Assembly: GCF_964204865.1 (NCBI RefSeq)
Contig: NC_135252.1
Span: 13,454,001-13,518,000, forward strand
Origin: Styela clava
Taxonomy: Eukaryota
Direction of reading: 5' to 3'
Length of the DNA: 64,000 nucleotides
Shown: one piece after another, positions 30,894 through 64,000 of the stretch
Numbering within the stretch: the first letter of the stretch is position 1
Layout of the letters: each line of letters starts with the position of its first letter
The notes under the pieces: model-generated
What the model was told of the DNA's origin: nothing
Databases searched by the model: none
The model's input: only the letters and a program-made list of their open reading frames with translations
Made by a program: the position numbers and the translations under genes

Positions 30894-31307
30894 GGACCTT
30901 TCCCCGAGCATCGACTTCCTTGTTTACTTCGTGACATTGGCCAATCAGCAAGATGCAAAACGTGACGTAACAATGCCCCCTTTTCGCATCTGCTCAGACA
31001 CTTTTCTCACTAAGACAGATTTTCAAGCGTGGTTGTAAACATTACCTCGTTTTTGCATTTTTGAACTCTATTCGTTAGTTTTCAGTTGTGTTTCGGAAAC
31101 TTAAATATAAATCAGATAATTCAATGATCACTCTTTCTTCCTAGGAGTTTTAATTTAATTGCAGTAATAAAAATTAGTGTAGAAATAGCTTAGCTGTGAT
31201 AGATTAGCCTGAAATTCTTTACCGGTAGTTTTAAAAAAGAGATTGTTGTACCGGTATGCAATGAATCATAATGATGATTTGAAACATATACCCCATTTTA
31301 CAGGCGC
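30894..31307 (+). mobile_element. 3'-truncated copy of the GGACC-terminal MITE family
   Basis: Collinear and highly similar to 46547-46950; begins AT|GGACCTTTCCCCGA. Confidence 0.82.
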
Positions 31308-31619
31308 TATTTGATTAAGATCAATATTATAAAATTATCCTAAATTAATAACAACTGACTGACTGAAGTACAGTAATGTCTGAAGATGTCATTGTACTCT
31401 GATAAATTGACCAAAGTTACCCTAGCAGACATCTCTCAGCGGACATCTCTCTCGTTTTCGGAACGGTAAAATAGCGTTGCCAGAAAACGATTTAACATGG
31501 CACTTAAATGCCGCATCGGAAAAAAGGAAAGATAGTCGCAAAGTACTTGCCAGATTCACGGCGAAATTTTGCTACACTCGGAATTACAAAACACTTATTT
31601 GTAATTTTCGATGGCCGGG

Positions 31620-33150
31620 CAGATTTTTGAAGTTGATATAAAAAAAGAACTTATATTGAAGTCATCCTAATCCAAGTTTTATGAAAATTATATGTTGGAA
31701 ACATATAATGATACATTGTCAAACATGGCCAAAAAGAAATTTCACATTAAAATTAATAAATGTCGGCATTTTAACCCCAAATTCTGTACTTTTCGATTAG
31801 GTGCCCCACTTTTAGATAAGACATCTCAAACAAACATATTGTGAAGTCATCTCGAACCAAGTTCCAGAAAAATTGTATGTCGGGAACATATAATATTATC
31901 TTGTCAAACATGTCACAATCATGATTTTTACATCAAAATTAGTAAATATCGGCATTTTAACCCAAAATTTTGGACTTTTCGATTACGTGCCCCACTTTTG
32001 AAGAAAATATCACAAAAGAACATATTGTGAAGTAACCTCGAACCAAGTTTGAGAAAAATTGTATGTCGGGAACATATAATAATATCTTGTTAAACATGGC
32101 CCAAACAGGAATTTTACATCAAAATTAATGAATATCAGTATTCCAACCCCAAATTTTGTACTTTTCAATTACGTGCCCCACTTTTGAAGAAAATATCACA
32201 AAAGAACATATTGTGAAGTAACCTCGAACCAAGTTTGAGAAAAATTGTATGTCGGGAACATATATTAATATCTTGGTAAACATGGCCCAAACAGGAATTT
32301 TACATCAAAATTAATAAATATCAGTATTTTAACCCCACATTTTGGACTTTTCGATTACGTGCCCCACTTTTGAATAAGATATCACAAAAGAACATATTGT
32401 GAAGTAACCTCGAACCAAGTTTGAGAAAAATTGTATGTCGGAAACAATATAACAATATCTTGTTAAACATGGCCCAAACAGGAATTTTACATCAAAATTA
32501 ATAAATATCAGTATTTCAACCCCAAATTTTGTACTTTTCGATTACGTGCCCCACTTTTGAATAAAATATCCCAAAAGAAGATATTGTGAAGTAACCTCGA
32601 ACCAAGTTTGAGAAAAATTGTATGTCGGGAACATATAATAATATCTTGTCAAACATGGCACAATCATGAATTTTACATCAAAATTAGTAAATATCGGCAT
32701 TTTAACCCAAAAATTTGAACTTTTTGATTACGTGCCCCACTTTTGAATAAAATATCCCAAAAGAACATATTGTGAGGTAACTTCGAACCAAGTTTGAGAA
32801 AAATTGTATGTCGGGAACATATAATAATATCTTGTCAAACATGGCACAATCATGAATTTTACATCAAAATTAATAAATATCAGTATTTCAACCCCAAATT
32901 TTGGACTTCTCGATTATGTGCCCCACTTTTGAATAAAATATTCCAAAAGAACATATTGTGAAGTAACCTCGAACCAAGTTTGAGAAAAATTGTATGTCGG
33001 GAACATATAATAATATCTTGTCAAACATGGCCCAAACAAGAATCCGACTTAAAATTAATAAACAACGCTATCACAACCCAGGATACTGTATACATTATAA
33101 TGGCGTGCCTCAATTTAAGTAAGATAACATAAACGAATTGTGAAATCATC
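31620..33150 (+). repeat. Left-arm tandem array of element A, 186-bp unit, about 8 copies
   Basis: GATTACGTGCCCCAC-like marker at 31795, 31981, 32167, 32353, 32540, 32726 and 32912. Confidence 0.92.
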
Positions 33151-33489
33151 TCGTTCTTTCATACCGGGGATCTATCTTATATTTAAAAATTTTTTTAAAA
33201 TGGTTGATCTTTGTAGAAAGCCACCACACCACGTCAAGGTGCCAACCATCGTGGCGGTTTTCATCTCAATATTATAGACTAGACCAAGAGAGAAAAACCT
33301 GGCAAAGGGCATGTTAAGCCAAATAGGTAAAACAGACTGATCCTTCGTCTGACTTGAACGATGTACCTAAAAAATGAGAATGTGAATGATCATATCTAGT
33401 TGAATATTGCTTTGCATGTAATTTAGCATCGAATGCACTTTTTTCTAATTCCATTATATTTCGCTGTTTTCCAGTGCCTCAACTGGCAC

Positions 33490-36085
33490 TGGAATACTAC
33501 AACATTTCGGATGGTACCATTTCAAACATGAAGTGCATTCGATCATGGTCTGATTTTCAATGTAAGACAGTTGGCAGTTGCAAAAAATCGGAATTTCCAA
33601 TCGCCTGGGCGCGGGTATAACACGTTTCTTGTTGATGTTAAATACCGACGAAAAATTTTAAGAGACTATACCATCGCATATTTTCTTCCTAAGATTTTTC
33701 TCGTCAAATAGGATATGCTCTGGTCGTATTTTGTTACATAGGGCTATGCAAAAACTAATCGAGAATAGGCCACATGATGCACCTAAAGTTTGTTGCTGGA
33801 CAACGGGGAATTCAATTTGTACTTTATTTGTTCCTTGCCTTGGCCGCATAAGAAGCGAAATCGCATATTTGTCACTTTCATTGTACTTCATATAGGAGCT
33901 ATCATAAATCTGTATAGTATTTTGGTCGGGGGTGAATATATTTGATGCTGTTACCCAGTGATTTTCATGCACAAATAAAATTTGAACAAATTTTTCAGAA
34001 GGAACATACACTTTAGGGCCAGATAGCGCTGTATAAAAAGTCGTGCTTTGCAACCCGTCTACTTCAGAATACCGAGATGAGAAAATTAATTGTGCGGTGT
34101 TCATAATATTCGAAGTAAACCAGTCTCTTCAAAAATTAGTTTTGGAATTCATTATTTTATGATCGACATCAGATAAATGTACAAATTTTTGGAATGGAAT
34201 TTTCGGTGAAACGAACCGCAACATCATAGATTGTGTAGTAGACGCTTCGTCAGCTTTTATTAGAATTGGGCTATCGTTATTAGAAAGTTCTTGAGGGCGA
34301 AACATCTTTGGAGGTCTAATGGGGGGGGGGGGGGGGGGGGCTGAAGATACACTCCTTTACACTTGTCTTTACCCTGAATTCGGGATCGTTTACTCCATTT
34401 CTCAATTTCTTGGTCAATTTGGTCATTGTTTTCAACTTTACTTTTTTTTGAACAAACAATCAAATTATCTTCATATTCCCTAATCAGAGAGTCATGGAGT
34501 TCATCATAAACTATAGCAATCTCGTCAAGACGTTTAAATCGTCTGTTGTTTAAACGAGTTCGCTTTAGTTCCTGCTGACTTTTTTCCATGAGTCCCTGAG
34601 TGCGATTATCTCGCGATATGTTTTGTTTCTCAGAAGCTGAGACTTTTGCATAAAAAGTCGAATATTTCAAATAGCCAATTGAATTACCATATCTTCCCAA
34701 ATCACCTACCATCAAACTTCCCCAAAGACATATCTTCGGGACATAGAACGTTTTAAATTTGGACAATATTTCCGGGCAGTAAAAATTGTTGGAACCCAAA
34801 ATTTCTGCATTACTTGCTATTTCAATGGCTGACGAAATGTCGCAATTCATTAATTCCGTAAAAGGGTTTATCTCGCTCAAATCTTCATCTGGTAAAAGTT
34901 CATCCGATGTCTCTAGGTCTAATTCACCATCAGAAGGCACAGGAATGTTCTGTTTTTCAATTTGCTTTTGCAAGTAAGTCCAACTATCATGCATAAGATT
35001 AGAATTTTGGCAAATTAATAAAATAGTGAAACAATTTTACGGACTGTTTTCAACTCTCCGCAACAAACGAGTAGTCCAAATATATGCATTAGTTCACGTT
35101 TTAATTTTGGTAGTCTACAAGCTAACTGTTTAAAATTCTTCATGGTATGACTCGTGCATAAATGAAGAAAGGGGCGTGAAAGCATATCTAAATTTGCGAT
35201 ACCTTCAATGACAGCGTAACATCGCGAAATGTACGATTCCAAACTTTCCCGCATGTTAACCTGAATTATTGACTTTATAAGGGCCATGCTTCCATCGCAT
35301 ATAAAAACTTTCGCGGGGAATCTTTTAGTTAGTTTGGAAACATCACAACGGAATTGCATGAGAAAGTTCGAAATATTTGGAATATTGTGCCGATTTGTTA
35401 CAAACGTGGCCACGGCCAGGGGTGATTTGCCTTTTTGTGGATGACGCGTAACAATTTCATAGACGTAGTATGGACTATGCCCACCGGACGCCAAAATTCC
35501 ACCAGTAGCGTCAATGTATATAATGTCAATAGAGGAATTTTGAATGAATTTTTTTACCGAAGCCACTGACCAAAACATAATCCCCGGAGGAACCCTTGAA
35601 ATTTGCTGCAAGGTTCCACGAATTACTTGATTTTTGGACCTTTCGTACTGCAACTTTCGCATTGAATATAGCGAACCCCATTGGTTGCCGGGGTCGGGGA
35701 CACGGATAACCCTAGATTCATGACGTGCCTTTTTTAAAACAGCTTGGGATGGGGCATCGTCCCTGTTACCAGAATGAAAGACTTCAGACGAGAGAGCACC
35801 TATCTTTTTTAAATAAATCTTACGAGGGAGAACATGAACCAATTTTTCCTGAAACTCTTTCCTACGTTTACCTTTAAGTCTCATTGATTTTAACCCAATA
35901 TGGCGAATCTTGCCTGTGTATGAAATATGAAACATGCGGGGGTCTTTCCGATAGGATACTACAGAAATTTTACGACTGCAACCTGTAAAGCAACAATGCC
36001 CACTGCAAGCAAAAATACGATTTGCCAATATTCCAGAACTTACTGTGTGCCATCGAAATGCATATGAACAGTAAGGGTCACTTTC
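33490..36085 (-). pseudogene. Decayed MULE-like DDE transposase fused to Ulp1/C48-like protease and PHD finger
   Basis: IYIDATG (D1), FICDGS (D2), HLCTSH (CxxH), RTQGLMEKSQQELK (E); ENHWV/IYDS/QQQ...SCGLF (Ulp1 H-D-Q-C); after one in-frame stop, IFCNCQ..MIECTSCLKWYHPKC (PHD). Confidence 0.85.
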
Positions 36086-36089
36086 TTTA

Positions 36090-37890
36090 ATATTCCTGTT
36101 TGGGCCATATTTAACAAGATATTATTATATGTTCCCGACATACAATTTTTCTCAAACTTGGTTCGAGGTTACTTCACAATATGTTCTTCTAGGATATTTT
36201 ATTCAAAAGTGGGGCACGTAATCGAAAAGTCCAAAATTTGGGGTTGAAATACTGATATTTATTACTTTTGATGTAAAATTCCTGTTTGGGCCATGTTTAA
36301 CAAGATAATATTATATGTTCCCGACATACAATTTTTCTCAAACTTGGTTCGAGGTTACTTCACAATATGTTCTTTTGTGATATTTTATTCAAAAGTGGGG
36401 CACGTAATCGAAAAGTTCAAAATTTTGGGTTAAAATGCCGATATTCACTAATTTTGATGTAAAATTCCTTTTGGGCCATGTTTATTTAACAAGATATTAA
36501 TATATGTTCTCGACATACAATTTTTCTCAAACTTGGTTCGAGGTTACTTCACAATATGTTATTCTAGGATAATTTATTCAAAAGTGGGGCACGTAATCGA
36601 AAAGTACAAAATTTGGGGTTGAAATACTGATATTTATTAATTTTGAAGTAAAATTCCTGTTTGGGCCATGTTTATTTAACAAGATATTATTATATGTTCC
36701 CGACATACAATTTTTCTCAAACTTGGTTCGAGGTTACTTCACAATATGTTCTTCTAGGATAATTTATTCAAAAGTGGGGCACGTAATCGAAAAGTACAAA
36801 ATTTGGGGTTGAAATACTGATATTTATTAATTTTGATGTAAAATTCCTGTTTGGGCCATGTTTATTTAACAAAATATTATTATATGTTCCCGACATACAA
36901 TTTTTCTCAAACTTGGTTCGAGGTTACTTCACAATATGTTCTTTTGTGATATCTTCTTCAAAAGTGGGGCACGTAATCGAAAAGTACAAAATTTGGGGTT
37001 GAAATACTGATATTTATTACTTTTGATGTAAAATTCCTGTTTGGGCCATGTTTAACAAGATATTATTATATGTTCCCGACATACAATTTTTTTCGAACTT
37101 GGTTCGAGGTTACTTCACAATATGTTCTTCTAGGATATTTTATTCAAAAGTGGGGCACGTAATCAAAAAGTTCAAAATTTGGGGTTGAAATACTGATATT
37201 TATTAATTTTGATGTAAAATTCCTGTTTGGGCCATGTTTGACAAGATAATATTATATGTTCCCGACATACAATTTTTCTGGAACTTGGTTCGAGATGACT
37301 TCACAGTATGATTTTCTGAAATATCTTATCTGAAAGTGGGGCACGTAATCAAATAGTACAGAATATTTGGTTAAAATGCCGATATTTACTAATTTTGATG
37401 TAAAATTCCTGCTTGGGCCACGTTTGACAAGATAATAATACATGTTCCCGACATACAATTTTTCTGGAACTTTCTTCGAGATGACTTCACAGTATGATTT
37501 TTTGAAATATCTTATCTGAAAGTGGGGCACGTAATCAAATAGTACAGAATTTTTGGTTAAAATGCCGATATTTACTAATTTTGATGTAAAATTCCTGTTT
37601 GGGCCATGTTTAACAAGATATTATTGTATGTTCCCGACATACAATTTTTCTGAAACTTGGTTCCGAATGACTTCACAAGATGTTTTTTTGAGATGTCTTA
37701 TCTAAAAGTGGGGCACTTAATCGAAAACTACATAATTTGGGGTTAAAATGCCGACATTTATGAATTTTAATGTGAAATTTCTTTTTGGCCATGTTTGACA
37801 ATGTAATAATATATGTTCCCAACATATAAATTTCATAAAACTTGAATTAGGATGACTTCAATATAAGTTCTTTTTTATATCAACTTCAAA
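36090..37890 (-). repeat. Right-arm tandem array of element A (reverse complement of the left), about 9-10 units
   Basis: AAAGTGGGGCACGTAATC recurs every 186-190 bp. Confidence 0.92.
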
Positions 37891-38115
37891 AATCTGCCCG
37901 GCCATCGGAAATTACAGATAAGTTTTGTGTAATTCCGAGTGTAGCAAAATTTCGCCGTAAATCTGGCAAGTACTTTGCGACTAGCTTTCCTTTTTTTCGT
38001 CGCGGCATTTAAGTGCCATGTTAAATCGTTTTCTGGCAACGCTATTTTACCGTTCCGAAAATGAGAGAGATGTCCGCTGAGAGATGTCTGCTAGGGTAAC
38101 TTTGGTGATAAATTG

Positions 38116-40909
38116 AGAAGTAATCGTAAAAGAGATGAGGATGAAAGAGACACACTGGATAGGACTAAATGTATGTACTTCGGTCGATCAAAGTTTTAAC
38201 CCAGTTTAACAAACTAAAGAAAGAGATTATTAAAAAACAAAGACAAAGAAATGGTAAAATTAGAATTCTAAACTTGGCCCACTACTATGATACATATGAA
38301 AAATGTAATAAGTCATTCTTTAAGAATTTGAAAAAAAAGCAAAAAGAATGAAGAATGTTATATCCACAAACTGAAGGACAAAAAAGGTTTCATACAAGAA
38401 AATTTGACAGAAAAAATGTACCTCGTAAAACAATATTATCAAAATCTGTATAAAAAACAAAACAATGATATGGAGATTCAAAAATACTTTATTGAAGCTA
38501 TTCCAGCTTCGAGAAAAATACAAGGAGAAGACGCAGAAACAATGCAGAGACAAATTGTCATAAACGAGGTTCAGGAAACCATTACATCTTTTAAAGAAGG
38601 TAAAACTCCAGGACCTGATGGTATAAGTATAGAGTTTTATAAGAAATGCTGGACTGTCATAAAAAATGATTTTTTTGAAGTAATGGAGGAAATTTATGAA
38701 GAAGGACTCACCGCAAAAGACTTCAAAATTGGATATGCAACTTTAATCCATAAAAAAGGAGAACTGGATCAGGTTAAAAATTACAGACCAGCTTTACTAA
38801 ACACAGATTATAAAATTTTGACCAAAATATTAACAAATAGATTGAAATGTATTTTACCTGATATGCTAGATGCCCACCAAACAGCTATACCAGGGAGGCG
38901 TATTTCTGATGCACTCATATTGTTAAGAGACATATGTCAGTATGTATACAGGAACAAAACAAAACCGGAGAATCTTCCATAATATCACTGGATTTTAACA
39001 AAGCCTTCGATAGTGTAGATTTGGATTACCTCTTCAACGTTCTTCGTAAAATCGGATTCAAAAATAAATTCATGAGTGTAATCCGGACATTATATATAAA
39101 TTCAGAAACTCGAGTGTTACTAAATGGTTATCTTAGTGAAGCAGTGAAACTCGAAAGAGGAATTCGACAAGGAGATCCTTTAAGTCTTTATATGTTCAAA
39201 TTGTTCACATTAGCTATTGAACCACTCTTAATTAGAATAAATACCTGTAACTCTATTAATGGAATATTGATACCACAAAATAAAGCATATCAGTTATGCG
39301 GATGATATTACCTTGACAATTCGAAACAAGACATCAATATAATCAGCACTGGATTTGATAAACAAATTTCAACTAGCAACGGGAATGAGGTTAAATATGG
39401 AAAAGACGAAACTTTTGAAATTAGGAACATGGAATAATCCCAGTTTATTTTCTAAGTTGTCTATCGTTCAGACTTTAAATATACTTGGAATAATTTTTTC
39501 CAATTCTGACACATCGGATGAAAATTGGCATTTTTGTTTAAATAATGCCAGAACTGTAATAGACGAATTGATGAATATTCCTCTATCTTTGGATGGAAAA
39601 TGTCTTCTAATTAAACTGAAAATATTACCCTTGTTTTTATATTGTGCGAAAGTGTTTCCTATTCCCCTGCATATCGATAAACAAATCAATAAAGTTGTGC
39701 AGTTTTTCATATTCAATGGAAGAAGTGTTTTAAAAATAGAAACTTTGTGCCAATGCAAATCATTGGCTGGATATGATATGATTAACATTCTAATTTTTAC
39801 TATGAGCATGTATGTCATGACAGCATTTGAGTATTATTGTAAAAGAACTAATATTGCTATTGATCAATGCAGACAATCTGATTTCAATTTTGTTGAATAC
39901 AACATAGGTCAACAGCTTAGTTTATTTTTCAAATTGCCTACTAATAATAGTGTATCCCATGTTTTTTTCCCTCAGAAATACTATGGAACTGTAATCAGCT
40001 TTCTGAAGCAGTACAACATCACTGAAACTGATTTAATTCAAGGAAAGCATAGACATTTAAATAATATAATTGTAAATAATTCGAAGGGTGGAGATAGAAT
40101 TGTTTTTTTGAGAGATGGTAATTTAAAAGGGGCTTGTTCAAATATACATTCTAAAATTTTGGCCAATAATGTAAGGACTTTCAATTATAAATTAATGTGG
40201 GACATTTTATCAATCAAAGTTAAGCCAAGAATAAAACATATTTCTGGGGATGATATTTGTGTGTTATGTAAACAAGATCCTGAATTTGTGTCTCATTTGT
40301 TTTGGAATTGTGTTTTTACTCAGAATGTCTATGCTTATATCTTTTCTGTGGCATTAAAAATGAGTAACTGTGTGATAAAAAATAATTATAAAACTTGCAT
40401 TTTATTGGACTTAAATGACCACTGTTATACAAATTTATCCATTATACAACGTGATGCTATTATATTGTTATTTTGTACAGCAAGATGTAAAATTTGGTTG
40501 GAGCGTAACGCAGTAATATTTCAAAATCATAACCCAAGCATAAATAATGTTATTATGAAAATTAGGAACTCACTTTTAATGAGAAGAAATATAGAAAAAG
40601 TGAGAAAGGAATTTTGTTATATAAAAGAACTTGCCATGATTTGTAATAACTTGTGAATAATTATAAAATTATGTTTTTTCATGCTAAATAATTAAAAATA
40701 AACTATGTAATTTGTATTACGAAATCAACAAATATATTATTGGAACTCCCTGGATTATATGGAATATTATATCTGATGGAATTATCTTGATATTACTGAT
40801 ATATATGTTTGTTCACTTGCGGTACACAATATACCTTTATTTATATTTAATTTATTTATTATTTACATATTCAATAATCCAAATTGTGGATCCATTTAAA
40901 AAAAAAAAA
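38116..40909 (+). mobile_element. 5'-truncated L1/Tx1-clade LINE (ORF2 RT and zinc finger), frameshifted
   Basis: KTPGPDGISIEFYK, NYRP, LLNTDYKILTKIL, SLDFNKAFDSV, GIRQGDPLS, SYADD (about 39288-39306, shifted frame), CVLC...SHLFWNC; poly(A) at 40898-40909. Confidence 0.9.
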
Positions 40910-57176: not shown

Positions 57177-58549
57177 TTTGTCCTTCTTTTACCGTCTCTA
57201 CCAGTTCCGGAAACGTCCGAAATCCTAAGCGAAGCTTCCACAAATCCCAAAGTCTTCGTAACCAACGACGCTACCGTCAATCATTTTTGTGAATACAGCC
57301 TTACGATACAGCTCTTTAGTTCCCCCTGTGATTTAGATGAGTTTATTTCTACTCCATAATCAGCATAAAAGGCGATTAAATGATTGATAAAAACAATAAA
57401 TAAAACTGATTATTAAATCAGGGGAGCAAAATCGTACAAAATATAAGATGGAAGGTTTTGCCAAAAAGAAGTGGTACGTGTTCACTCACCTAATATTATT
57501 AACACACGCGCACGCACACAACCATTGGGCTATAATAATGTTAGAAAAAAGAGCTTTAGATAAATTTTATAGTAAACAAAAAATAAGTAAAAAAGAAATT
57601 AGAATAAAAATAAGAATTGTAATTAGAAATAAGAATTGTTTGCCACACCATTTTAAATTCCCAAATTGAGTACAGATTATGTAAACAAAAGTGGACAGTA
57701 TTTAATATGAAGACAAAAAGTAAAAAAAATTCGCCAAGCTGATTATAGTTGGAGTCAAATGCCAAATTGCCCAATCAAAGCTATTTAATCCTGCACTTCG
57801 CTAACTGGTCCGTAAAAAGGGCATATACGGAACTCAAATATTAAGGAATTTAATATTTATCAAGCTGGTAGTGTTTGTGATAAGTCAGACCGTAAATATA
57901 TACTACTACGGTCAGACCACTAAATGTCATTAAACACGAAAATAAGGCTATATGTATTTCTTAGGAGGTGGCAGATTATGAAAAACTAATAGGGCCGCAA
58001 AATTACACAGATGCCAATTCGCATAATGTATATGCTATATAATACTGACAAGTCGCTGTATACGCACAGAGGCCTAAAACGCCCAGAAGTTGTTATTTTG
58101 ATAATCCTTTTAGTTTAAATTTACAAGATAAATCCGCCAAGGTTTTTGTTTTAAAAAATTGGTTATCTGAGAGTTCAAGGCTGCAATCGGAGTCAAAAAG
58201 TTTTAAAACCGGAGTCGACGGTAAATTTTACCTATTCCCGACCCTACCAAAGTTACCCTAGCAGACATCTCTCAGCAGACATCTCTCTCGTTTTTGAACG
58301 CGCCGATCACTGTTGCCAGAACTCAGATTTCAATTGAGCGATGCGAGAATTTACGAAAAAGGCATCGATGCAAAATCAGCTGATGCTTTATGTGTTGCCA
58401 GATTAACCACAAAAACTGTGAATAATTGCCGAAAAATCACAGTTCTCCCCCAAATATAAGTGTCTCACAAATATATCCGCTTAGTATAAGAAAAATAAGT
58501 ATAAGTGCTTATAATGGGAAGTAAACACAACGAGTTTGACAAAGATTGG

Positions 58550-59500
58550 ATAGGTGGAAGAGATACTTATTATCGTTTAAACCTGTCCCAGTCGTCAATT
58601 TTTAATAAAATTGGTAAAAAGACCTATTCTGCCCCAAAAAGATGTGTCTTACAATCATGACCCTTTCCATTTATACATAAACAGCAGTAGTACATTTAAA
58701 GTGTTTATACAGCGAGTTTCAAAAAGTTTGTATGGGGGGAAGATATTTTTATTCTCGTTTAAACATGACCCGCTTGACAATTTATGATAGAAATGGCAAA
58801 AAGATCTCTTTTGCTCCAAAAAATGAGTGTCTTGCAATTACGGTCCCCACATTTACAAAGACCAGTAGTAGTACATATAATAAAGTGTTCATACAGCGAG
58901 TTTAAAAAAGTTTGTGTAGGGGGAAGATACTTTAATTATCGTTTAAACATGGCCCGCTAGTCAATTAATTATAGAAATGGCAAATAGACCTACTTTGTCC
59001 CAAAAAATGAGTGTCTTGCAGTTATGGGCCCCTCATTTGCACAAGACCAGCAATAGTACATATAATAAAGTGTTTATACAGCGAGTTTGAAAAAGTTTGT
59101 ATGGGGGGAAGATACTTTAATTATCGTGTAAACATGGCCCGCTAGTCAATTAATGATAGAAATGGCAAAAAGACCTACTTTGCCCCAAAAAAATGAGTGT
59201 CTTGCAGTTATGGGCCCCTCATTTACACAAGACCAGCAGTAGTACATATAATAAAGTGTTCACACAGCGAGTTTGAAAAAGTTTGTATGGGGGGAAGATA
59301 CTTTAATTATCGTTTAAACATGGCCCGCAAGTCAATCAATGATAGAAATGGCAAAAAGATCTACTTTGCCCCAAAAAATGAGTATCTTACAATTACGGGC
59401 CCCTCATTTACACAAGACCAGTAGTAGTACATATAATAAAGTGTTGATACAGCGAGTTTGAAAAAGTTTTTTATGGGGGGAAGATAATTTAATTATCGTA
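58550..59500 (+). repeat. Left-arm tandem array of element B, about 5 units of 185-186 bp
   Basis: AAACATGGCCCGC marker with GGCCC at 58951, 59136 and 59322. Confidence 0.9.
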
Positions 59501-59514
59501 ATTAGATAATTTAA

Positions 59515-60570
59515 TATCCTCTGGTCTAATTCTCTCGCATAAAGCTATGCAAAAACTTATTGCAAATGGTCCGCATGATGCACCTAACGTTTGTTGCTAG
59601 ACGGGAGGAAATTCAATCTGTAGTTTGTTTGTTCCTAATGTTGGCCGCATGAGAAGCGAAATAGCATATTTGTCATTTTCTGTGTATTTCAAGTACGAAC
59701 TATCATAGATTTGAATGGTATTCTGATTGAACGAAAATATCTTTGACGCAGCTACCCAGTGATTATCATGCACGAACAAAATTTGAATAAATTTTTTGAA
59801 GGGAGCGTAGACCTTTGGGCCAGATATTGTGGTATAAAGTGTCGTGTTTTGAAGGCCGTCAGCATTCGGGTACTGCGATGACAAAATTAGCGATGCGATA
59901 TTTATAATGTCCGATGTGAACCAATCCCTTCGGAAATTAGTATTGGAGCTCAATATTTCAAAGTCAACGTTGGACATATGTACCAAGTTTCGAAAATCAA
60001 TTTTGGGTGACCTAAATCGCAATGCCATTGACTTAGAAGACCCCTCACATATTATTTCCGTTTCCAATACAGCATTATCAAGCTATTCTATTGGGCAAGA
60101 AGCTTTCAGAGGTCTAGACGGTGGCTGTAAATATATACCTTTTGATTTATCATTACCCATATTTCTACATCTTTTACCCCATTTCTCAATTTCTTGGTCA
60201 ATTTGGTCTCTGTTATCGACTTTCCTTTTTTTTGGGACGAACAATCAAATTATCCTGATATTCCCTAATTAGGGAATCATGAAGTTGATCATACACTACA
60301 GCGATCTCGTCAAGACGTTTAAACCGCCTGTTGTTGAAACGAGTACGCTTTAGCTCCTGTTGACTTTTCTCCATGATTCCCTGTGTTCGATTATCTTTTG
60401 CTAAGTTCTGTTTGTTAGAGACCGATGATTTTGCGTAAAAATGCTTATACTTTTCATAGCCTATTGTTGTACCGTAAATATATACTACTGCGTTGTACCA
60501 AACCTGCCTAAATCACCTACTAGCAAAGCGCCCCATAGACAAATTTTGGGTACATAAAACGTTTTAAATT
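59515..60570 (-). pseudogene. Transposase C-terminal and Ulp1-like remnant of element B
   Basis: RRDWFTSDII..., IQILFVHDNHWV, IQIYDSSY; homologous to 33700-34760 of element A. Confidence 0.85.
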
Positions 60571-61064
60571 TAGTTCTTCCTTTATCTCTACCTGGTTTTA
60601 CTTTGAAATGCTTAAAGTTTGTCGCGTATTTGCAACTCGCCACGCAGAATTTTATATAGTTTATCGGTGTTTATTGGAATATTACGAATCCACCAGACGA
60701 TTCAAAGATCGAAATGTTCGCTTTTTTTCGTCTTCAAGTATAATATTAACCTTCTTTATTAAAATAAACACTGAAACTTATTTATTGGACAAGAAATGGG
60801 CCTATGAGTCGTTTTCCTAAATTTTTTCTTCCTAGTATTCTCCTTGTTGCTGCATTTTTGTTTTAAAAGTTTTTGTTCTTTTCAACTATTGGACCAATGA
60901 ACAATTCAGCGATCGCATTTCAACGATCCAGTGGTCAGCGAAGTCGGGAGTTTTTCAATAAAGTAGACCAGGGTGGTCCAAAGCCGTCATGCCGATACAT
61001 TCCGTGCGGCCCACAGAGCAATTTTAGCGTATATTTGTATCTGATAGCAGTATATTTCTATCAT

Positions 61065-62950
61065 TATTTGACTAGCGGGCCATGTTTAAACGATAATTAA
61101 AGTATCTTCCCCCCATACAAACTTTTTCAAACTCGCTGTATAAACACTTTATGATATGTACAACTACTGGTCTTGTGTAAATGAGGGGCCCGTAATTGCA
61201 AGACACTCATTTTTTGGAGCAAAAGAGGTCTTTTTGCCATTTCGATTCAAAAATTGACTATGGGCCATGTTTAATCGATATTTAAAGTATCTTCCCCCCA
61301 TACAAACTTTTTCAAACTCCCTGTATAAACACTTTATTATATGTACTACTACTGGTCTTTTGTAAACGTGGGGACCGTAATTGTAAGACACTCATTTTTT
61401 GGAGCAAAAGAGGTCTTTTGGCCATTTTTCTCATAAATTGACTATCGGGCCATGTTTATGCGATAATAAAAATATCTTCCCCCCATACAAACTTTTTCAA
61501 ACTCGCTGTATTAACACTTTATTATATGTACTATTACTGGTCTTTTGTAAATGTGGGGCCCATAACTGCAAGACACTCATTTTTTGGGGCAAAATAGGTA
61601 TTTTTGCTATTTCTATCATTAATTGAATAGCGGGCCATGTTTGAACAAGAATTAAAGTATTTTCCCCCATACAAAGTTTTTCAAACTCGCTGTGTTAACA
61701 CTTTATTATATGTACTACTATTGTTCTTTTGTAAATGTGGGGCCCATAACTGCAAGACACTCATTTTTTGGGGCAAAATAGGTATTTTTGCTATTTCTAT
61801 CATTAATTGCATAGCGGGCCATGTTTGAACAAGAATTAAAGTATTTTCCCCCCATACAAACTCGCTGTGTTAACACTTTAATATATTTACTACTGCTGGT
61901 CCTGTGTAAATGTGGGGCCCGTAATTGCAAGACACTCATTTTTCGGGGCAAATTAGGTCTTTTTGCCTTTTCCATCAATAATTGACTAGCGGGCCATGTT
62001 TATACGATAATTAAAGTATCTTCCCCCATACAAACTTTTTCAAACTCGCTGTATTAACACTTTATGATATGTACTACTACTGGTTTTGTGTAAATGAGGG
62101 GCCCGTAATTGCAAGACACTCATTTTTTGGAGCAAAAGAGGTCTTTTTGCCATTTCTATTCAAAAATTGACTATCGGGCCATGTTTAAGCGATTATAAAA
62201 ATATCTTCCCCACATACAAACTTTTTCAAACTCGCTGTATTAACACTTTATTATATGCACTACTACTGGTCTTTTGTAAATGTGGGGACCGTAATTGCAA
62301 GACACTCATTTTTTGGATCAGAAGAGGTCTTTTTGCCATTTCTATCATTAATTGACTAGCGGGCCATGTTTGAACAAGAATTAAAGTATCGTCCCCCCAT
62401 ACAAACATTTTCAAACTCGCTTTATAAACACTTTATTATGTGTACTACTACTGGTCTTTTGTAAACGTGGGGACCGTAATTGAAAGACATTCATTTTTTG
62501 GGGCAAAATAGGTCTTTTTGCCATTTCTATCAAAAATTGATTATCGGGCCATGTTTGGGTCATTAAAAAAATATTTTCCCCCATACAAAATTTTTCAAAC
62601 TCGCTGTATTAACACTTTAATATATGTACTACTACTGGTCTTTTGTAAATGTGGGGCCCGTAATTGCAAGACACTCATTTTTGGAGCAAAAGAGGTCTTT
62701 TTGCCATTTCTATCATAAATTGACAAGCGGTTCATGTTTAAACGAGAATAAAAATATCTTCCCCCCATACAAACTTTTTGAAACTCGTTGTATAAACACT
62801 TTATTAAATGTACCACTGCTGTTTATGTATAAATGGAGAGGACATGACTGTAAGACACATCTTTTTGGGGCAAAATAGTTTTTTTTCTACCAATTTTATT
62901 AAACATTGACGACTGGGACAGGTTCAAACGATAATGGGTATCTCTTCCAC
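61065..62950 (-). repeat. Right-arm tandem array of element B, about 10 units
   Basis: GGGCCATGTTT and CAAGACACTCATTTTT recur about every 185 bp; reverse complement of the left array. Confidence 0.9.
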
Positions 62951-64000
62951 CTATACAATCTTTGTTAAACTCGTTGTGTTTACTTCCTATTATAAGCACT
63001 TATACTTATCTTTCTTATACTAAGCGGATTTATTTGTGAGACGCTTATAATTTGGGGAGAACTGTTGTTTTTTTGGAAATTATTCACAGTTTCTATGATT
63101 AATCTGGCAACGCATAAAGCATCAGATAATTTTGCATCGATGCCTTTTCCGTAAACTCTCGCATCGCTCAATTGAAATCTGAGTTCTGGCGACGGTGATC
63201 GGCGCGTTAAAAAACGAGAGAGATGTCTGCTGAGAGATATCTGCTAGGGTAACTTTGGTCCCGACCCTGTCGTGCTTGTTAGGTCCCTACAGGGTCGCAT
63301 ACCGGTATCGGTATAATATAGGTAGGCATACCCAAAGCGTATAATATAATACTATATTTATAGTCACTTTGGGCATACCATACGCAGGGTTGCCATATTG
63401 GCTTTTTTAACGCCAAATTTGCCATTTTTCAAACGCGTTTGGCGTCAGAATTTCCGTTTGGCTTTTTTCAAGTCTATTCTAGTGTCTATTATTAAAAGCA
63501 TATGAAATACAATATTTAGTGTGTAACAACTGAACAATAGCCTATTACGGTACCTGTACTTAGCTACTTACCATTAGGATTTCCTGGAGCATCGATTTCC
63601 TTGTTTGTTACATTACCGTACCTCTTAACCATACCCAATAAGAAATAAGGGGTCTCATGTACTTTCTTACCTGAATAACTTCTAGTGGGCGTGGCGTAAC
63701 AATTTTGGATATATGATTCCTGACCCCTACCTGATGACGTCATCCAAAAATTACGTCACAATAACGAAATACAGCTTGCCAAAGTATAGCGACGTTCACC
63801 CGTGAATGACGCCTACGAGTATGTCAACAAACTCAATACGTCAGCGACCTCTCTCTTATCGGGGTCGTTGTGCAGAGCCCAAAATAAACAAGGATCACAA
63901 GCGACTAAATTGTCGCCAAAGAACGTTCACGATATCCCATTCTGACCAATTTCTGTCCAGCAATAGCTCATGTATCATGCTTCAATCTAATAGAGCGTTA

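What the first reader, a model, noticed from the sequence alone, without database searches (positions are those of the whole stretch)
31410..38106. Foldback-type Mutator-like transposon encoding a transposase-Ulp1 protease-PHD fusion
Seen: 9-bp TSD, ACC..GGT termini, and kilobase inverted arms of tandem units. The minus-strand frame has D/D/CxxH/E motifs, then a Ulp1-like H-D-Q-C catalytic set, then a PHD finger. The Ulp1 and PHD parts are separated by one in-frame stop; the transposase and Ulp1 parts by a homopolymer frameshift and one stop. Known: 9-bp TSDs and a CxxH motif after the second Asp typify Mutator-like transposases; Foldback structure is known in Drosophila FB-NOF and Phantom MULEs; Ulp1 domains occur in plant MULEs and Zisupton. 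Inference: the ancestral protein was one polypeptide coupling transposition to deSUMOylation and histone reading, possibly countering silencing. This exact combination may be an undescribed family.
Basis: partly seen in the sequence, partly recalled or inferred. Interest (0 to 1): 0.78.

Follow-up and report, generated by a model that had tools for sequence, protein, structure and literature searches.

The report
Broken Rehavkus-type foldback transposon copy
This is a damaged copy of a cut-and-paste DNA transposon of the sea squirt Styela clava whose intact relatives make one long protein joining a Mutator-like transposase to a SUMO-protease domain and a chromatin-reading PHD finger, a layout that fits the already catalogued Rehavkus group.

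Summary
Window 31410-38106 is a 6.7-kb foldback transposon. It has 236-nt terminal inverted repeats and inverted arms of 186-bp tandem units. Its 9-bp target duplication (GATAAATTG) is confirmed by an empty paralogous site. The genome is Styela clava.

It lacks about 3.3 kb, including the first ~320 codons. It has three frameshifts, one of them between the CxxH motif and the catalytic Glu, and three in-register stops.

The single-polypeptide inference is supported. A sister subfamily keeps an intronless 1204-codon ORF with WRKY-like finger, DDE core (D-D-CxxH-E), Ulp1/SENP fold and PHF2-like PHD. Fish homologues show the same order. dN/dS is 0.05-0.22 on Ulp1 and PHD.

No Pfam transposase model matches the core, but three results point to the Mutator/IS256 clan:
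- the best fold match is the IS256-family ISCth4 transposase (Z 11-12);
- the N-terminal domain has a WRKY fold;
- the nearest language-model clusters are all MULE.

Zisupton is rejected. Anatomy and PHD match Rehavkus (Repbase, now under MuDR). Ulp1 in animal MuDR-type elements was noted in 2010. I rate it a new member of a known kind. Paralogues adding a USP deubiquitinase are the more unusual by-product. The Ulp1 and PHD roles remain inferred.

The parts
31401..31409 (.). left copy of the 9-bp target-site duplication GATAAATTG
   Evidence: The empty paralogous site L053 has a single copy.
31410..31645 (+). left terminal inverted repeat (outer unique part, starts ACCAAAGTTACCCTAGCAG)
   Evidence: I17: 236 nt, 96%.. 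20 of the 40 scored genome matches are at least 92% identical over at least 185 nt.
31636..33062 (+). left arm: 7.7 tandem units of 186 bp, inverted relative to the right arm
33439..33600 (-). PHD finger remnant. The Cys4-His-Cys part is kept. The last Cys pair is lost through a stop at 33456 and a +1 shift near 33446.
   Evidence: The intact form in L031 matches PHF2/PHF8/BPTF PHD fingers.
33658..34104 (-). Ulp1/SENP-like cysteine protease piece with H (33960), D (33903), Q (33798) and C (33774). It is bounded by in-register stops at 34131 and 33660.
   Evidence: Pfam Peptidase_C48 scores 16.7 bits here (below the cut-off) and 26.1 bits in intact L031 (cut-off 20.7). Fold match to SENP5/Ulp1..
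34321..34340 (-). run of 20 C (poly-Pro codons) at the frameshift between the transposase and Ulp1 parts
34260..34994 (-). C-terminal half of the transposase core (helical insertion and catalytic Glu at 34586-34584), in a different frame from the N-terminal half
35015..36091 (-). N-terminal half of the transposase core: WRKY-like zinc finger, first and second Asp (35512, 35296) and CxxH (35158-35147). The ORF's first ~320 codons are deleted upstream of this.
36088..37844 (-). right arm: 9.4 tandem units of 186 bp. It abuts the truncated coding region at the deletion junction.
37871..38106 (-). right terminal inverted repeat
38107..38115 (.). right copy of the 9-bp target-site duplication GATAAATTG

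Best explanation
Window 31410-38106 is a non-autonomous, internally deleted and frameshifted copy of a Rehavkus-type DNA transposon of Styela clava. Rehavkus belongs to the Mutator-like superfamily in the broad sense.

Intact relatives encode one intronless protein of about 1200 residues, built in this order:
- a disordered N-terminus;
- a WRKY/GCM1-like zinc finger, probably binding sites in the termini or the 186-bp subterminal repeats;
- an RNase H-like DDE core with a helical insertion (D-D-CxxH-E), which cuts the element out and pastes it with a 9-bp staggered target cut;
- a Ulp1/SENP-fold cysteine protease with an intact H-D-Q-C set;
- a PHF2/BPTF-like PHD finger.

Shown here: the element's anatomy, mobility (TSD plus empty site), the single ORF, the folds, the conserved residues and purifying selection.

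Inferred, not shown:
- the PHD finger steers the transposase to H3K4-methylated, open chromatin;
- the protease removes SUMO or a related modifier from chromatin, repair or silencing factors at donor or target sites, aiding transposition or opposing SUMO-dependent silencing;
- this copy could only move in trans, perhaps through the sister subfamily, which shares its outermost terminus.
For: Anatomy and mobility. A second copy in the window also has a 9-bp TSD, CCCGACCCT.

Copies in the genome: 103 protein matches at E<=0.001 among 113 candidates, and 40 scored terminus matches of 76 candidates.

Single ORF: L031:5470-9081(-) reads 1204 codons without a stop. It carries Peptidase_C48 at 26.1 bits (cut-off 20.7) and PHD at 20.7 bits (cut-off 24), and matches the PHF2 PHD at E 6e-7. 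The 48%-identical paralogue L040 and proteins P0002, P0004 and P0017 have the same order.

Catalytic residues: D194, D266, C312 and H315 are invariant, and E505 is at least 90% conserved, in 59 sequences. Ulp1 D, Q, Q and C are invariant, and H is present in 10 of 11.

Fold of the core (model pLDDT 90.8):
- the Foldseek top 5 are all ISCth4 transposase;
- VIA gives Z 12.2, 11.3 and 10.2 for ISCth4, against 10.2 for Hermes and 9.6 for P element;
- ISCth4 is rank 1 of 48,161 chains at Z 11.3, against 9.3 and 9.2, and model residues 1-67 match WRKY domains at Z 6.0, 5.5 and 5.2.
ISCth4 is an IS256-family transposase, and that family is similar to MULE transposases (PMC7780238, passage seen). The WRKY-GCM1 fold is the DNA-binding domain of MULE transposases (PMC1702500, abstract seen in the listing).

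Language-model neighbours: 10 of the 10 best named clusters carry PF10551 MULE.

Ulp1-PHD model: it matches SENP5, Ulp1, SENP1 and SENP2 at E 7e-6 to 1e-3, and the PHF2 PHD at 38% identity.

Selection, window copy against L031: dN/dS is 0.11 for the core, 0.05 for Ulp1 and 0.22 for PHD.

Link to Rehavkus: the published features match (PMC6446971 Table 1; 10.1101/2024.12.02.626372; PMC10218199, which describes 164-bp units in the termini of Rehavkus-1_TC). There is also a homologue in Helobdella robusta, the host of Rehavkus-1_HR, at E 3e-57.
Against: - No Pfam transposase model, MULE included, matches the core: L031 at E<=1, and 0 of 35 long relatives at E<=0.001.
- The genome's 82 PF10551 matches are all elsewhere (one search compared, by my reading of the two lists).
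- hhalign against four canonical S. clava MULEs aligned only 45 columns around the second Asp and CxxH, at probability 7%.
- The Z margin of ISCth4 over hAT and P is only about 1-2.
- No Repbase or Dfam sequence could be compared, so membership in Rehavkus rests on anatomy, the PHD finger and a Helobdella homologue.
- dS exceeds 1, so the dN/dS values are rough.
- Nothing shows protease activity, the substrate, histone binding or present-day transposition.
- Evidence for transcription is weak: short contigs at depth 2-5 in runs only guessed to be RNA.
- None of the 6 close copies (92-100% identical) reads open through the whole ORF.
Confidence: 0.82

Rival explanations
1. It is a Zisupton/KDZ transposon, the superfamily best known for a transposase joined to a Ulp1 SUMO protease. 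Earlier notes of this scan report that superfamily in this same genome.
For: Ulp1 plus PHD on a transposase, with homologues in teleost fish, where Zisupton was first described. Earlier scan notes file other S. clava elements with Ulp1 and PHD under Zisupton.
Against: - The TSD is 9 bp in 2 of 2 window copies, against 8 bp for Zisupton (PMC12730594, passages seen).
- The gene is intronless, whereas Zisupton is described as multi-exonic and matched by PF18758 (PMC9297572, passages seen).
- PF18758 matched neither L031 nor any of 35 relatives.
- The nearest fold is IS256 with a WRKY finger, and the nearest language-model clusters are MULE.
- Caveat: PF18758 found nothing anywhere in the genome and its control also stayed silent, so that search is uninformative.
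Confidence: 0.03
2. The Ulp1-PHD part is captured host-gene cargo, as in plant KI-MULEs or Pack-MULEs, and not a working part of the transposase.
For: Plant MULEs carry ULP1-like sequences as captured genes (PMC2836005 discussion, passage seen). In the window copy the parts are separated by stops and frameshifts.
Against: - One uninterrupted ORF in L031, with the same C-terminus in L032 and L033.
- The same order is kept in a 48%-identical paralogue and in fish and metagenome proteins at 30-35% identity.
- The catalytic residues are invariant.
- dN/dS is 0.05 for Ulp1 and 0.22 for PHD, as low as for the core.
Confidence: 0.05
3. The core belongs to another superfamily with an insertion domain and CxxH (hAT, P or Kolobok-like), or is a superfamily of its own that only resembles MULEs.
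For: No Pfam MULE match. hhalign was inconclusive. Hermes reaches Z 10.2 and P element 9.6. The profile finds 2974 cluster representatives with no transposase annotation. Dupeyron et al. treat Rehavkus as an outgroup of MULEs (PMC6446971, passages seen).
Against: - ISCth4 (IS256 family) ranks first in all three fold searches.
- The DNA-binding domain has a WRKY fold.
- The TSD is 9 bp. That 8 bp is typical of hAT and P is recalled, not from a call.
- All ten best named Atlas clusters are MULE.
Confidence: 0.08
4. The intact relatives are domesticated host genes, not transposons, and the window copy is a pseudogene.
For: NCBI annotates them as 'uncharacterized protein LOC...'.
Against: - The ORF sits between kilobase inverted arms and shared termini.
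- There are many dispersed copies.
- TSDs and an empty site show insertion.
- Several copies are deletion derivatives.
Confidence: 0.02

Closest known systems
Rehavkus DNA transposons (Repbase: Rehavkus-1_HR, Rehavkus-1_TC, Rehavkus-3_TC; now filed under MuDR)
   Same: [quoted passage not shown] Rehavkus-1_TC has 164-bp units in arrays of mostly 5 and 8; this element has 186-bp units in arrays of 7.7 and 9.4. Sources: PMC6446971 Table 1, 10.1101/2024.12.02.626372 and PMC10218199 (passages seen). A homologue exists in Helobdella robusta.
   Different: The host is a tunicate, with relatives in fish, a sea cucumber, a cnidarian and a leech; the papers I read list only arthropods and annelids. In the four Rehavkus-citing papers whose text I searched for 'Ulp1' the word does not occur. 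No Repbase sequence could be compared.
Canonical Mutator-like elements (MuDR, Phantom, Muta1) and bacterial IS256/ISCth4
   Same: 9-bp TSD, TIRs, a WRKY-GCM1-type DNA-binding finger, and a DDE core with CxxH and a helical insertion. The best structural match is ISCth4.
   Different: Pfam PF10551 does not match. The profile-profile match is weak. The spacing from the second Asp to Glu is long, 239 residues. Ulp1 and PHD are fused.
MuDR-type transposons of hydra and lancelet, and Ginger1 transposases (Bao, Kapitonov and Jurka 2010, PMC2836005)
   Same: Animal DNA transposases carrying a C-terminal Ulp1 domain, in some cases with PHD (Ginger1-9_HM is listed as Ulp1, PHD; Fig. 1e aligns Ginger1 and Mutator TPases).
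   Different: Ginger1 has a Gypsy-integrase-like core and 4-bp TSDs. Whether the hydra and lancelet MuDR entries belong to this lineage could not be checked, because Repbase Reports are not held.
Zisupton (KDZ superfamily)
   Same: A transposase joined to a Ulp1 SUMO protease, sometimes with PHD; present in fish and, by earlier scan notes, in this genome.
   Different: 8-bp TSD, multi-exon genes and a PF18758 core. None of these is found here.
Foldback elements with tandem-repeat arms (Drosophila FB-NOF, Tetris, Meloidogyne Tm1 Mutator/Foldback)
   Same: Long inverted arms built of tandem units. For Tm1 a Mutator link is in the title (PMC3169594, seen in a listing only).
   Different: That FB elements make 9-bp TSDs is recalled, not from a call.

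Membership tests
Rehavkus | 9-bp target-site duplication | tested here: met
   GATAAATTG at both ends, with an empty paralogous site. The second copy has CCCGACCCT.
Rehavkus | long terminal inverted repeats with subterminal tandem (minisatellite) repeats | tested here: met
   236-nt TIR, and 186-bp units x7.7 and x9.4 in inverted arms. The L031 element has arms longer than 3.5 kb.
Rehavkus | single ORF whose transposase carries a PHD finger | tested here: met
   L031 has a 1204-codon ORF. PHD scores 20.7 bits there (cut-off 24) and 24.7 bits in L040. PHF2 match at E 6e-7, with a fold match. The ORF is broken in the window copy.
Rehavkus | sequence similarity to Repbase Rehavkus transposases or termini | not testable with these tools
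   No Repbase or Dfam is available.
Mutator-like superfamily (MULE/IS256 clan) | DDE core with a C/DxxH motif after the second Asp | tested here: met
   D194, D266, C312 and H315 invariant, E505 at least 90% conserved, in 59 sequences.
Mutator-like superfamily (MULE/IS256 clan) | match to the Pfam MULE (PF10551) or Transposase_mut models | tested here: not met
   No hit for L031 at E<=1, and 0 of 35 relatives. The 82 genome hits of PF10551 lie elsewhere.
Mutator-like superfamily (MULE/IS256 clan) | structural or profile similarity closer to MULE/IS256 than to other superfamilies | tested here: met
   ISCth4 ranks first in Foldseek, VIA and the wide VIA search, at Z 11.3-12.2 against 9.2-10.2 for hAT and P. 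All Atlas neighbours are MULE. hhalign against 4 MULEs was inconclusive. The margin is modest.
Mutator-like superfamily (MULE/IS256 clan) | WRKY-GCM1-type zinc-finger DNA-binding domain N-terminal to the core | tested here: met
   Model residues 1-67 match WRKY domains at Z 6.0, 5.5 and 5.2. Cys and His are conserved in relatives.
Zisupton/KDZ | 8-bp TSD | tested here: not met
   9 bp in 2 of 2 window copies.
Zisupton/KDZ | KDZ transposase domain PF18758; multi-exon gene | tested here: not met
   No PF18758 hit. The ORF is intronless. The genome-wide PF18758 search was uninformative.
Ulp1/SENP (peptidase C48) domain | C48 fold with the catalytic His-Asp-Cys and the oxyanion Gln | tested here: met
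   Pfam 26.1 bits against a cut-off of 20.7. Foldseek matches SENP5, Ulp1 and SENP1 at probability 1.00. The residues are conserved. Activity and substrate were not tested.

The most novel reading that the evidence does not exclude
The window copy belongs to a large metazoan transposase lineage: 2974 cluster representatives at E<=0.001, with no Pfam model for its core. Members habitually carry modules that read chromatin and remove ubiquitin-like modifiers. The order is either TPase-Ulp1-PHD, or PHD-TPase-Ulp1-USP in paralogues of about 1900 residues. If so, this is a transposon-encoded system that targets H3K4-methylated chromatin and strips SUMO or ubiquitin from silencing or repair factors. 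I did not find the double-protease form, or a systematic account of it, in the papers I could search.
Probability: 0.3. Interest if true: 0.65.

Novelty: new member of a known kind. Interest (0 to 1): 0.38.

Why it matters
For this copy alone, little: it is a dead derivative of a catalogued kind of transposon.

The family is more useful. It supplies natural, intact, intronless genes in which a Mutator-like transposase is joined to a SENP-fold protease and to a PHD finger whose closest solved relatives are H3K4me3 readers. Both accessory domains are under purifying selection.

That makes two old ideas directly testable with ordinary assays: that transposases use histone marks to choose targets, and that transposons tamper with SUMO or ubiquitin signalling to escape silencing or manage repair.

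It also exposes an annotation gap. Thousands of related proteins in public data are labelled 'uncharacterized' because no Pfam model covers the core.

Tried and rejected
Steps that led nowhere:
- Pfam on the three window ORFs gave only a sub-threshold C48 hit.
- Sequence searches of solved structures found nothing, either with the core profile or with the Ulp1 segment alone.
- hhalign of the family profile against four canonical S. clava MULEs was inconclusive.
- A second homologous-protein run with the 59-sequence alignment returned only 3 proteins and added nothing.
- Two cluster-member runs named few taxa: Styela clava, Mugilogobius chulae, Apostichopus japonicus, and one eukprot transcript that I take from recall to be Aurelia.
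- The genome-wide PF18758 search found nothing, and its control also stayed silent, so it says nothing.
- A local HMM of the L031-type Ulp1 segment did not find the Ulp1-like segments of L041 and L042. Pfam on those segments alone did: 29.2 bits for L041, and 18.8 bits, below the cut-off, for L042.
- Read evidence was weak. Only Logan contigs were available, and the RNA label of runs X1-X3 is a guess.

Not done:
- I did not build a consensus, because natural intact copies answered the question.
- Supplements were closed. The supplementary tables of PMC6446971 (Additional files 1 and 4) may list Rehavkus domains, Ulp1 included, and I could not see them.
- Böhne et al. 2012, Yuan and Wessler 2011, Marquez and Pritham 2010 and the Repbase Reports are not held. 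What I say of them comes from papers that cite them, or from recall.
- 'Not in print' rests on these checks. One search found 17 papers with 'Rehavkus'. I searched the text of four of them for 'Ulp1' and found none. In two more I searched for 'Rehavkus' only. One search (Ulp1 + transposase + PHD finger + Mutator) found 0 papers. One search found 4 papers, none on Rehavkus. None of the 15 listed rows holds 'Rehavkus'.


Full report
WHAT IS THERE

The stretch 31410-38106 is bounded by the 19-mer ACCAAAGTTACCCTAGCAG in inverted orientation. The window holds 4 matches against 0.01 expected by chance; the other two bound a second element at 58246-63259.

The outer 236 nt form a 96% inverted repeat. 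Inside them lie two inverted arms of 186-bp tandem units: 7.7 units at 31636-33062 and 9.4 units at 36088-37844.

GATAAATTG flanks both ends. A paralogous locus on contig C5 carries the left and right flanks joined, with a single GATAAATTG. It is an empty site, and it proves both the insertion and the 9-bp duplication. The second element in the window has its own 9-bp duplication, CCCGACCCT.

The genome is Styela clava. A 99% identical NCBI protein sits on a contig of exactly the length of G000 contig C17.

STATE OF THIS COPY

The coding strand is the minus strand. Against an intact relative, the copy covers only residues 320-1200 of 1204, and it does so in three frames.

Against a fuller copy of the same subfamily (L034, 97.4% identical in the coding part), it lacks about 3.3 kb. 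That is the 5' unique DNA plus the N-terminal codons. The right arm is joined directly to the start of the zinc-finger region.

Read in register with the intact ORF, the lesions are as follows:
- a 7-nt loss near 35032, which puts D/D/CxxH and the catalytic Glu in different frames;
- a +14 shift at a run of 20 C (34321-34340);
- a +1 shift near 33446;
- in-register stops at 34131, 33660 and 33456.

It did not see the shift inside the transposase, the N-terminal deletion or the damaged end of the PHD finger. The poly-C shift could be an assembly error; the other lesions could not.

THE FAMILY

The 337-residue transposase piece has 103 matches in the genome at E<=0.001, from 113 candidates. The terminus has 40 scored matches of 76 candidates, and 20 of them are at least 92% identical over at least 185 nt. 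That suggests roughly ten elements of this subfamily; both counts are lower bounds.

None of the 6 close copies (92-100% identical) listed is open through the whole ORF.

A sister subfamily is 78% identical in protein. It shares the outermost 49 nt of the terminus at 98% and has arms longer than 3.5 kb. It keeps open frames of 1182-1423 codons in 3 copies.

L031:5470-9081(-) reads 1204 codons from the first Met to the stop, without introns. It carries Peptidase_C48 at 26.1 bits (cut-off 20.7) at residues 1018-1121. It carries a PHD finger at residues 1155-1201 scoring 20.7 bits (cut-off 24), which matches the PHD fingers of PHF2, PHF8, EBS and BPTF at E values down to 6e-7. A 48%-identical paralogue, L040, has the same order, with PHD at 24.7 bits.

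ARE THE ACCESSORY DOMAINS WORKING PARTS?

- In an alignment of 11 sequences (tunicate, fish, metagenomes), the Ulp1 Asp, two Gln and Cys are invariant. The His-Trp is present in 10 of 11; the exception has a deletion.
- An AlphaFold model of the last 265 residues (pLDDT 74.9; the first 31 residues are disordered) matches SENP5, yeast Ulp1, SENP1 and SENP2 at E 7e-6 to 1e-3. Its tail matches the PHF2 PHD at 38% identity.
- Between the window copy and L031, dN/dS is 0.11 for the core, 0.05 for Ulp1 and 0.22 for PHD. dS exceeds 1, so the ratios are rough, but protein conservation against saturated silent change is clear.
- In the alignment, the query has F, Y, M and W at the positions I recall as the PHF2 methyl-lysine cage. 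The cage positions are recalled, not from a call.

WHICH SUPERFAMILY?

Pfam has no match for the core: L031 at E<=1, and 0 of 35 long relatives. The Pfam MULE model finds 82 canonical MULE places in the genome, and none of them is a place found (compared by my reading of the two lists). hhalign against four of those MULEs aligned only the second Asp and CxxH region, at probability 7%.

Four other lines point to the Mutator/IS256 clan.

1. Motifs. In 59 sequences D194, T196, D266, C312 and H315 are invariant, and E505, K512 and N437 are nearly so. This is a DDE triad with CxxH.

2. Fold. The core model (pLDDT 90.8, pTM 0.85) has ISCth4 transposase as its five best Foldseek hits. VIA gives Z 12.2, 11.3 and 10.2 for ISCth4, against 10.2 for Hermes and 9.6 for P element. 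ISCth4 is also rank 1 of 48,161 representative chains, at Z 11.3 against 9.3 and 9.2. ISCth4 belongs to the IS256 family, whose transposases are similar to those of MULEs (PMC7780238, passage seen).

3. DNA-binding domain. The first 67 residues of the model match WRKY domains at Z 6.0, 5.5 and 5.2. The WRKY-GCM1 fold is the DNA-binding domain of MULE transposases (PMC1702500, abstract seen in the listing).

4. Language-model neighbours. All ten best named Atlas clusters carry PF10551.

Together with the 9-bp duplication, this supports 'Mutator-like in the broad sense'. The margin over hAT and P is modest.

REHAVKUS, NOT ZISUPTON

The published description of Rehavkus is a 9-bp TSD, TIRs of 26-400 bp, one ORF, a PHD finger and a minisatellite, with the group used as the outgroup of MULEs (PMC6446971, Table 1 and the section on origin; passages seen). 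Other papers describe it as a foldback element with variable numbers of subterminal tandem repeats (bioRxiv 10.1101/2024.12.02.626372, passages). PMC10218199 (passages) reports 164-bp units in arrays of mostly 5 and 8 in the termini of the 9.5-kb Rehavkus-1_TC. Repbase moved Rehavkus into MuDR (PMC4455052, passage).

The element here fits each of these points. The family also has a homologue in Helobdella robusta, the host of Rehavkus-1_HR, at E 3e-57. I could not compare Repbase sequences, so membership is by anatomy and proxy.

Zisupton is the obvious rival, because it joins a transposase to Ulp1, and earlier notes of this scan file other S. clava elements under it. But Zisupton makes 8-bp TSDs (PMC12730594), is multi-exonic, and is recognised by PF18758 (PMC9297572). 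None of these holds here.

S. clava therefore seems to hold two unrelated transposase lineages that each carry Ulp1 and PHD modules. I did not compare the two directly.

IS THE ARCHITECTURE NEW?

Bao, Kapitonov and Jurka (PMC2836005, passages seen) list Ginger1 transposases with Ulp1 and PHD. They state that Ulp1 is encoded in Mutator transposons of hydra and lancelet, citing Repbase Reports, and their Fig. 1e aligns Ulp1 and PHD of 'Ginger1 TPases, Mutator TPases'. They also mention a transposase joined to a C19 ubiquitin hydrolase in Trichomonas. So the idea and the combination have precedents.

The word Ulp1 is absent from the four Rehavkus-citing papers whose text I searched for it. My searches also found no paper that joins Rehavkus with Ulp1. 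Supplements and Repbase Reports were out of reach.

BROADER FAMILY

A profile of ten S. clava cores finds 2974 cluster representatives at E<=0.001, and 272 at E<=1e-30. Of 35 long ones scanned, 15 carry UCH/USP, 11 carry Peptidase_C48 and 9 carry PHD.

Named hosts seen are Styela clava, several teleosts, Apostichopus japonicus and Helobdella robusta. One eukprot transcript I take from recall to be Aurelia.

In S. clava, deeper paralogues at 24-26% identity in the core (L041, L042; about 1900 codons) read PHD, then transposase, then Ulp1, then USP. Peptidase_C48 scores 29.2 bits in L041 and 18.8 bits in L042. UCH scores 69.7 bits in L042; in L041 the USP motifs are seen by eye only.

HOW IT MOST LIKELY WORKS

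Shown: the element inserted by a cut-and-paste type event with a 9-bp staggered target cut, and its relatives encode a protein with the folds listed above.

Inferred from knowledge of MULE, IS256 and hAT transposases:
- The zinc finger binds the termini or the repeated subterminal units.
- The DDE core cleaves and transfers the DNA strands.
- More repeat units may strengthen binding. This idea is cited for foldback elements in 10.1101/2024.12.02.626372, after Liu and Wessler 2017.

Inferred from the nearest solved relatives:
- The PHD finger docks on H3K4-methylated nucleosomes and biases where the enzyme acts.
- The protease removes SUMO or a related modifier from proteins at the donor or target site, such as repair factors or SUMO-dependent silencing machinery.

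The window copy cannot make any of this protein. It keeps good termini, so it could be moved in trans.

Expression of the intact subfamily is unsettled. Short contigs at 99% identity or more, at depth 2-5, lie on parts of the ORF in three runs that are only guessed to be RNA.

VERDICT

This is a new member of a known kind. Interest is moderate to low for the copy itself and higher for the family-wide coupling to Ubl proteases.

Noticed in passing
window 58246-63259: A second foldback element with the same 19-nt termini, a 9-bp TSD (CCCGACCCT), and 185-bp units x5.3 and x9.6. Its short interior keeps only a Ulp1 fragment nearly identical to the intact L031 subfamily, so it is a deletion derivative of the sister subfamily.
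   Followed up: partly
L041:522-6143(-) and L042:806-6637(-) (G000 C18:17.54 Mb and C18:14.24 Mb): Giant intronless paralogues of about 1900 codons, 24-26% identical in the core, that read N-terminal PHD, transposase, Ulp1 and USP/UCH deubiquitinase. Of 35 long relatives in public data, 15 also carry UCH. A transposase with two ubiquitin-like-modifier proteases seems the most unusual thing seen here.
   Followed up: partly
whole family (alignments A1 and A3): The transposase core has no Pfam model, yet a profile finds 2974 cluster representatives at E<=0.001. The NCBI entries seen are labelled 'uncharacterized' or 'hypothetical'.
   Followed up: partly
window 34321-34340 (-): A run of 20 C encoding poly-proline sits exactly at one frameshift. 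Homopolymer length errors in long-read assemblies could create or hide this shift.
   Followed up: no
window 38404-38982 (+): An ORF fragment resembling a reverse transcriptase of a non-LTR retroelement lies about 300 bp beyond the right end of the element. The label is by eye and was not searched.
   Followed up: no
L042:7410-8999 (-): [quoted passage not shown] By eye it looks like a Penelope-like element.
   Followed up: no
window 31210-31307: A short interspersed repeat of about 98 nt has more than 1500 first-look candidates in the genome. The 40 that were scored are 83-94% identical. It lies 100 nt left of the insertion site.
   Followed up: no
G000 C14:21726894-21734866 and C14:21738465-21739412: A copy of the window's subfamily lies within 4 kb of a member of a 30%-identical paralogue group with a 1505-codon open frame. 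This may be clustering or nesting of related elements.
   Followed up: no
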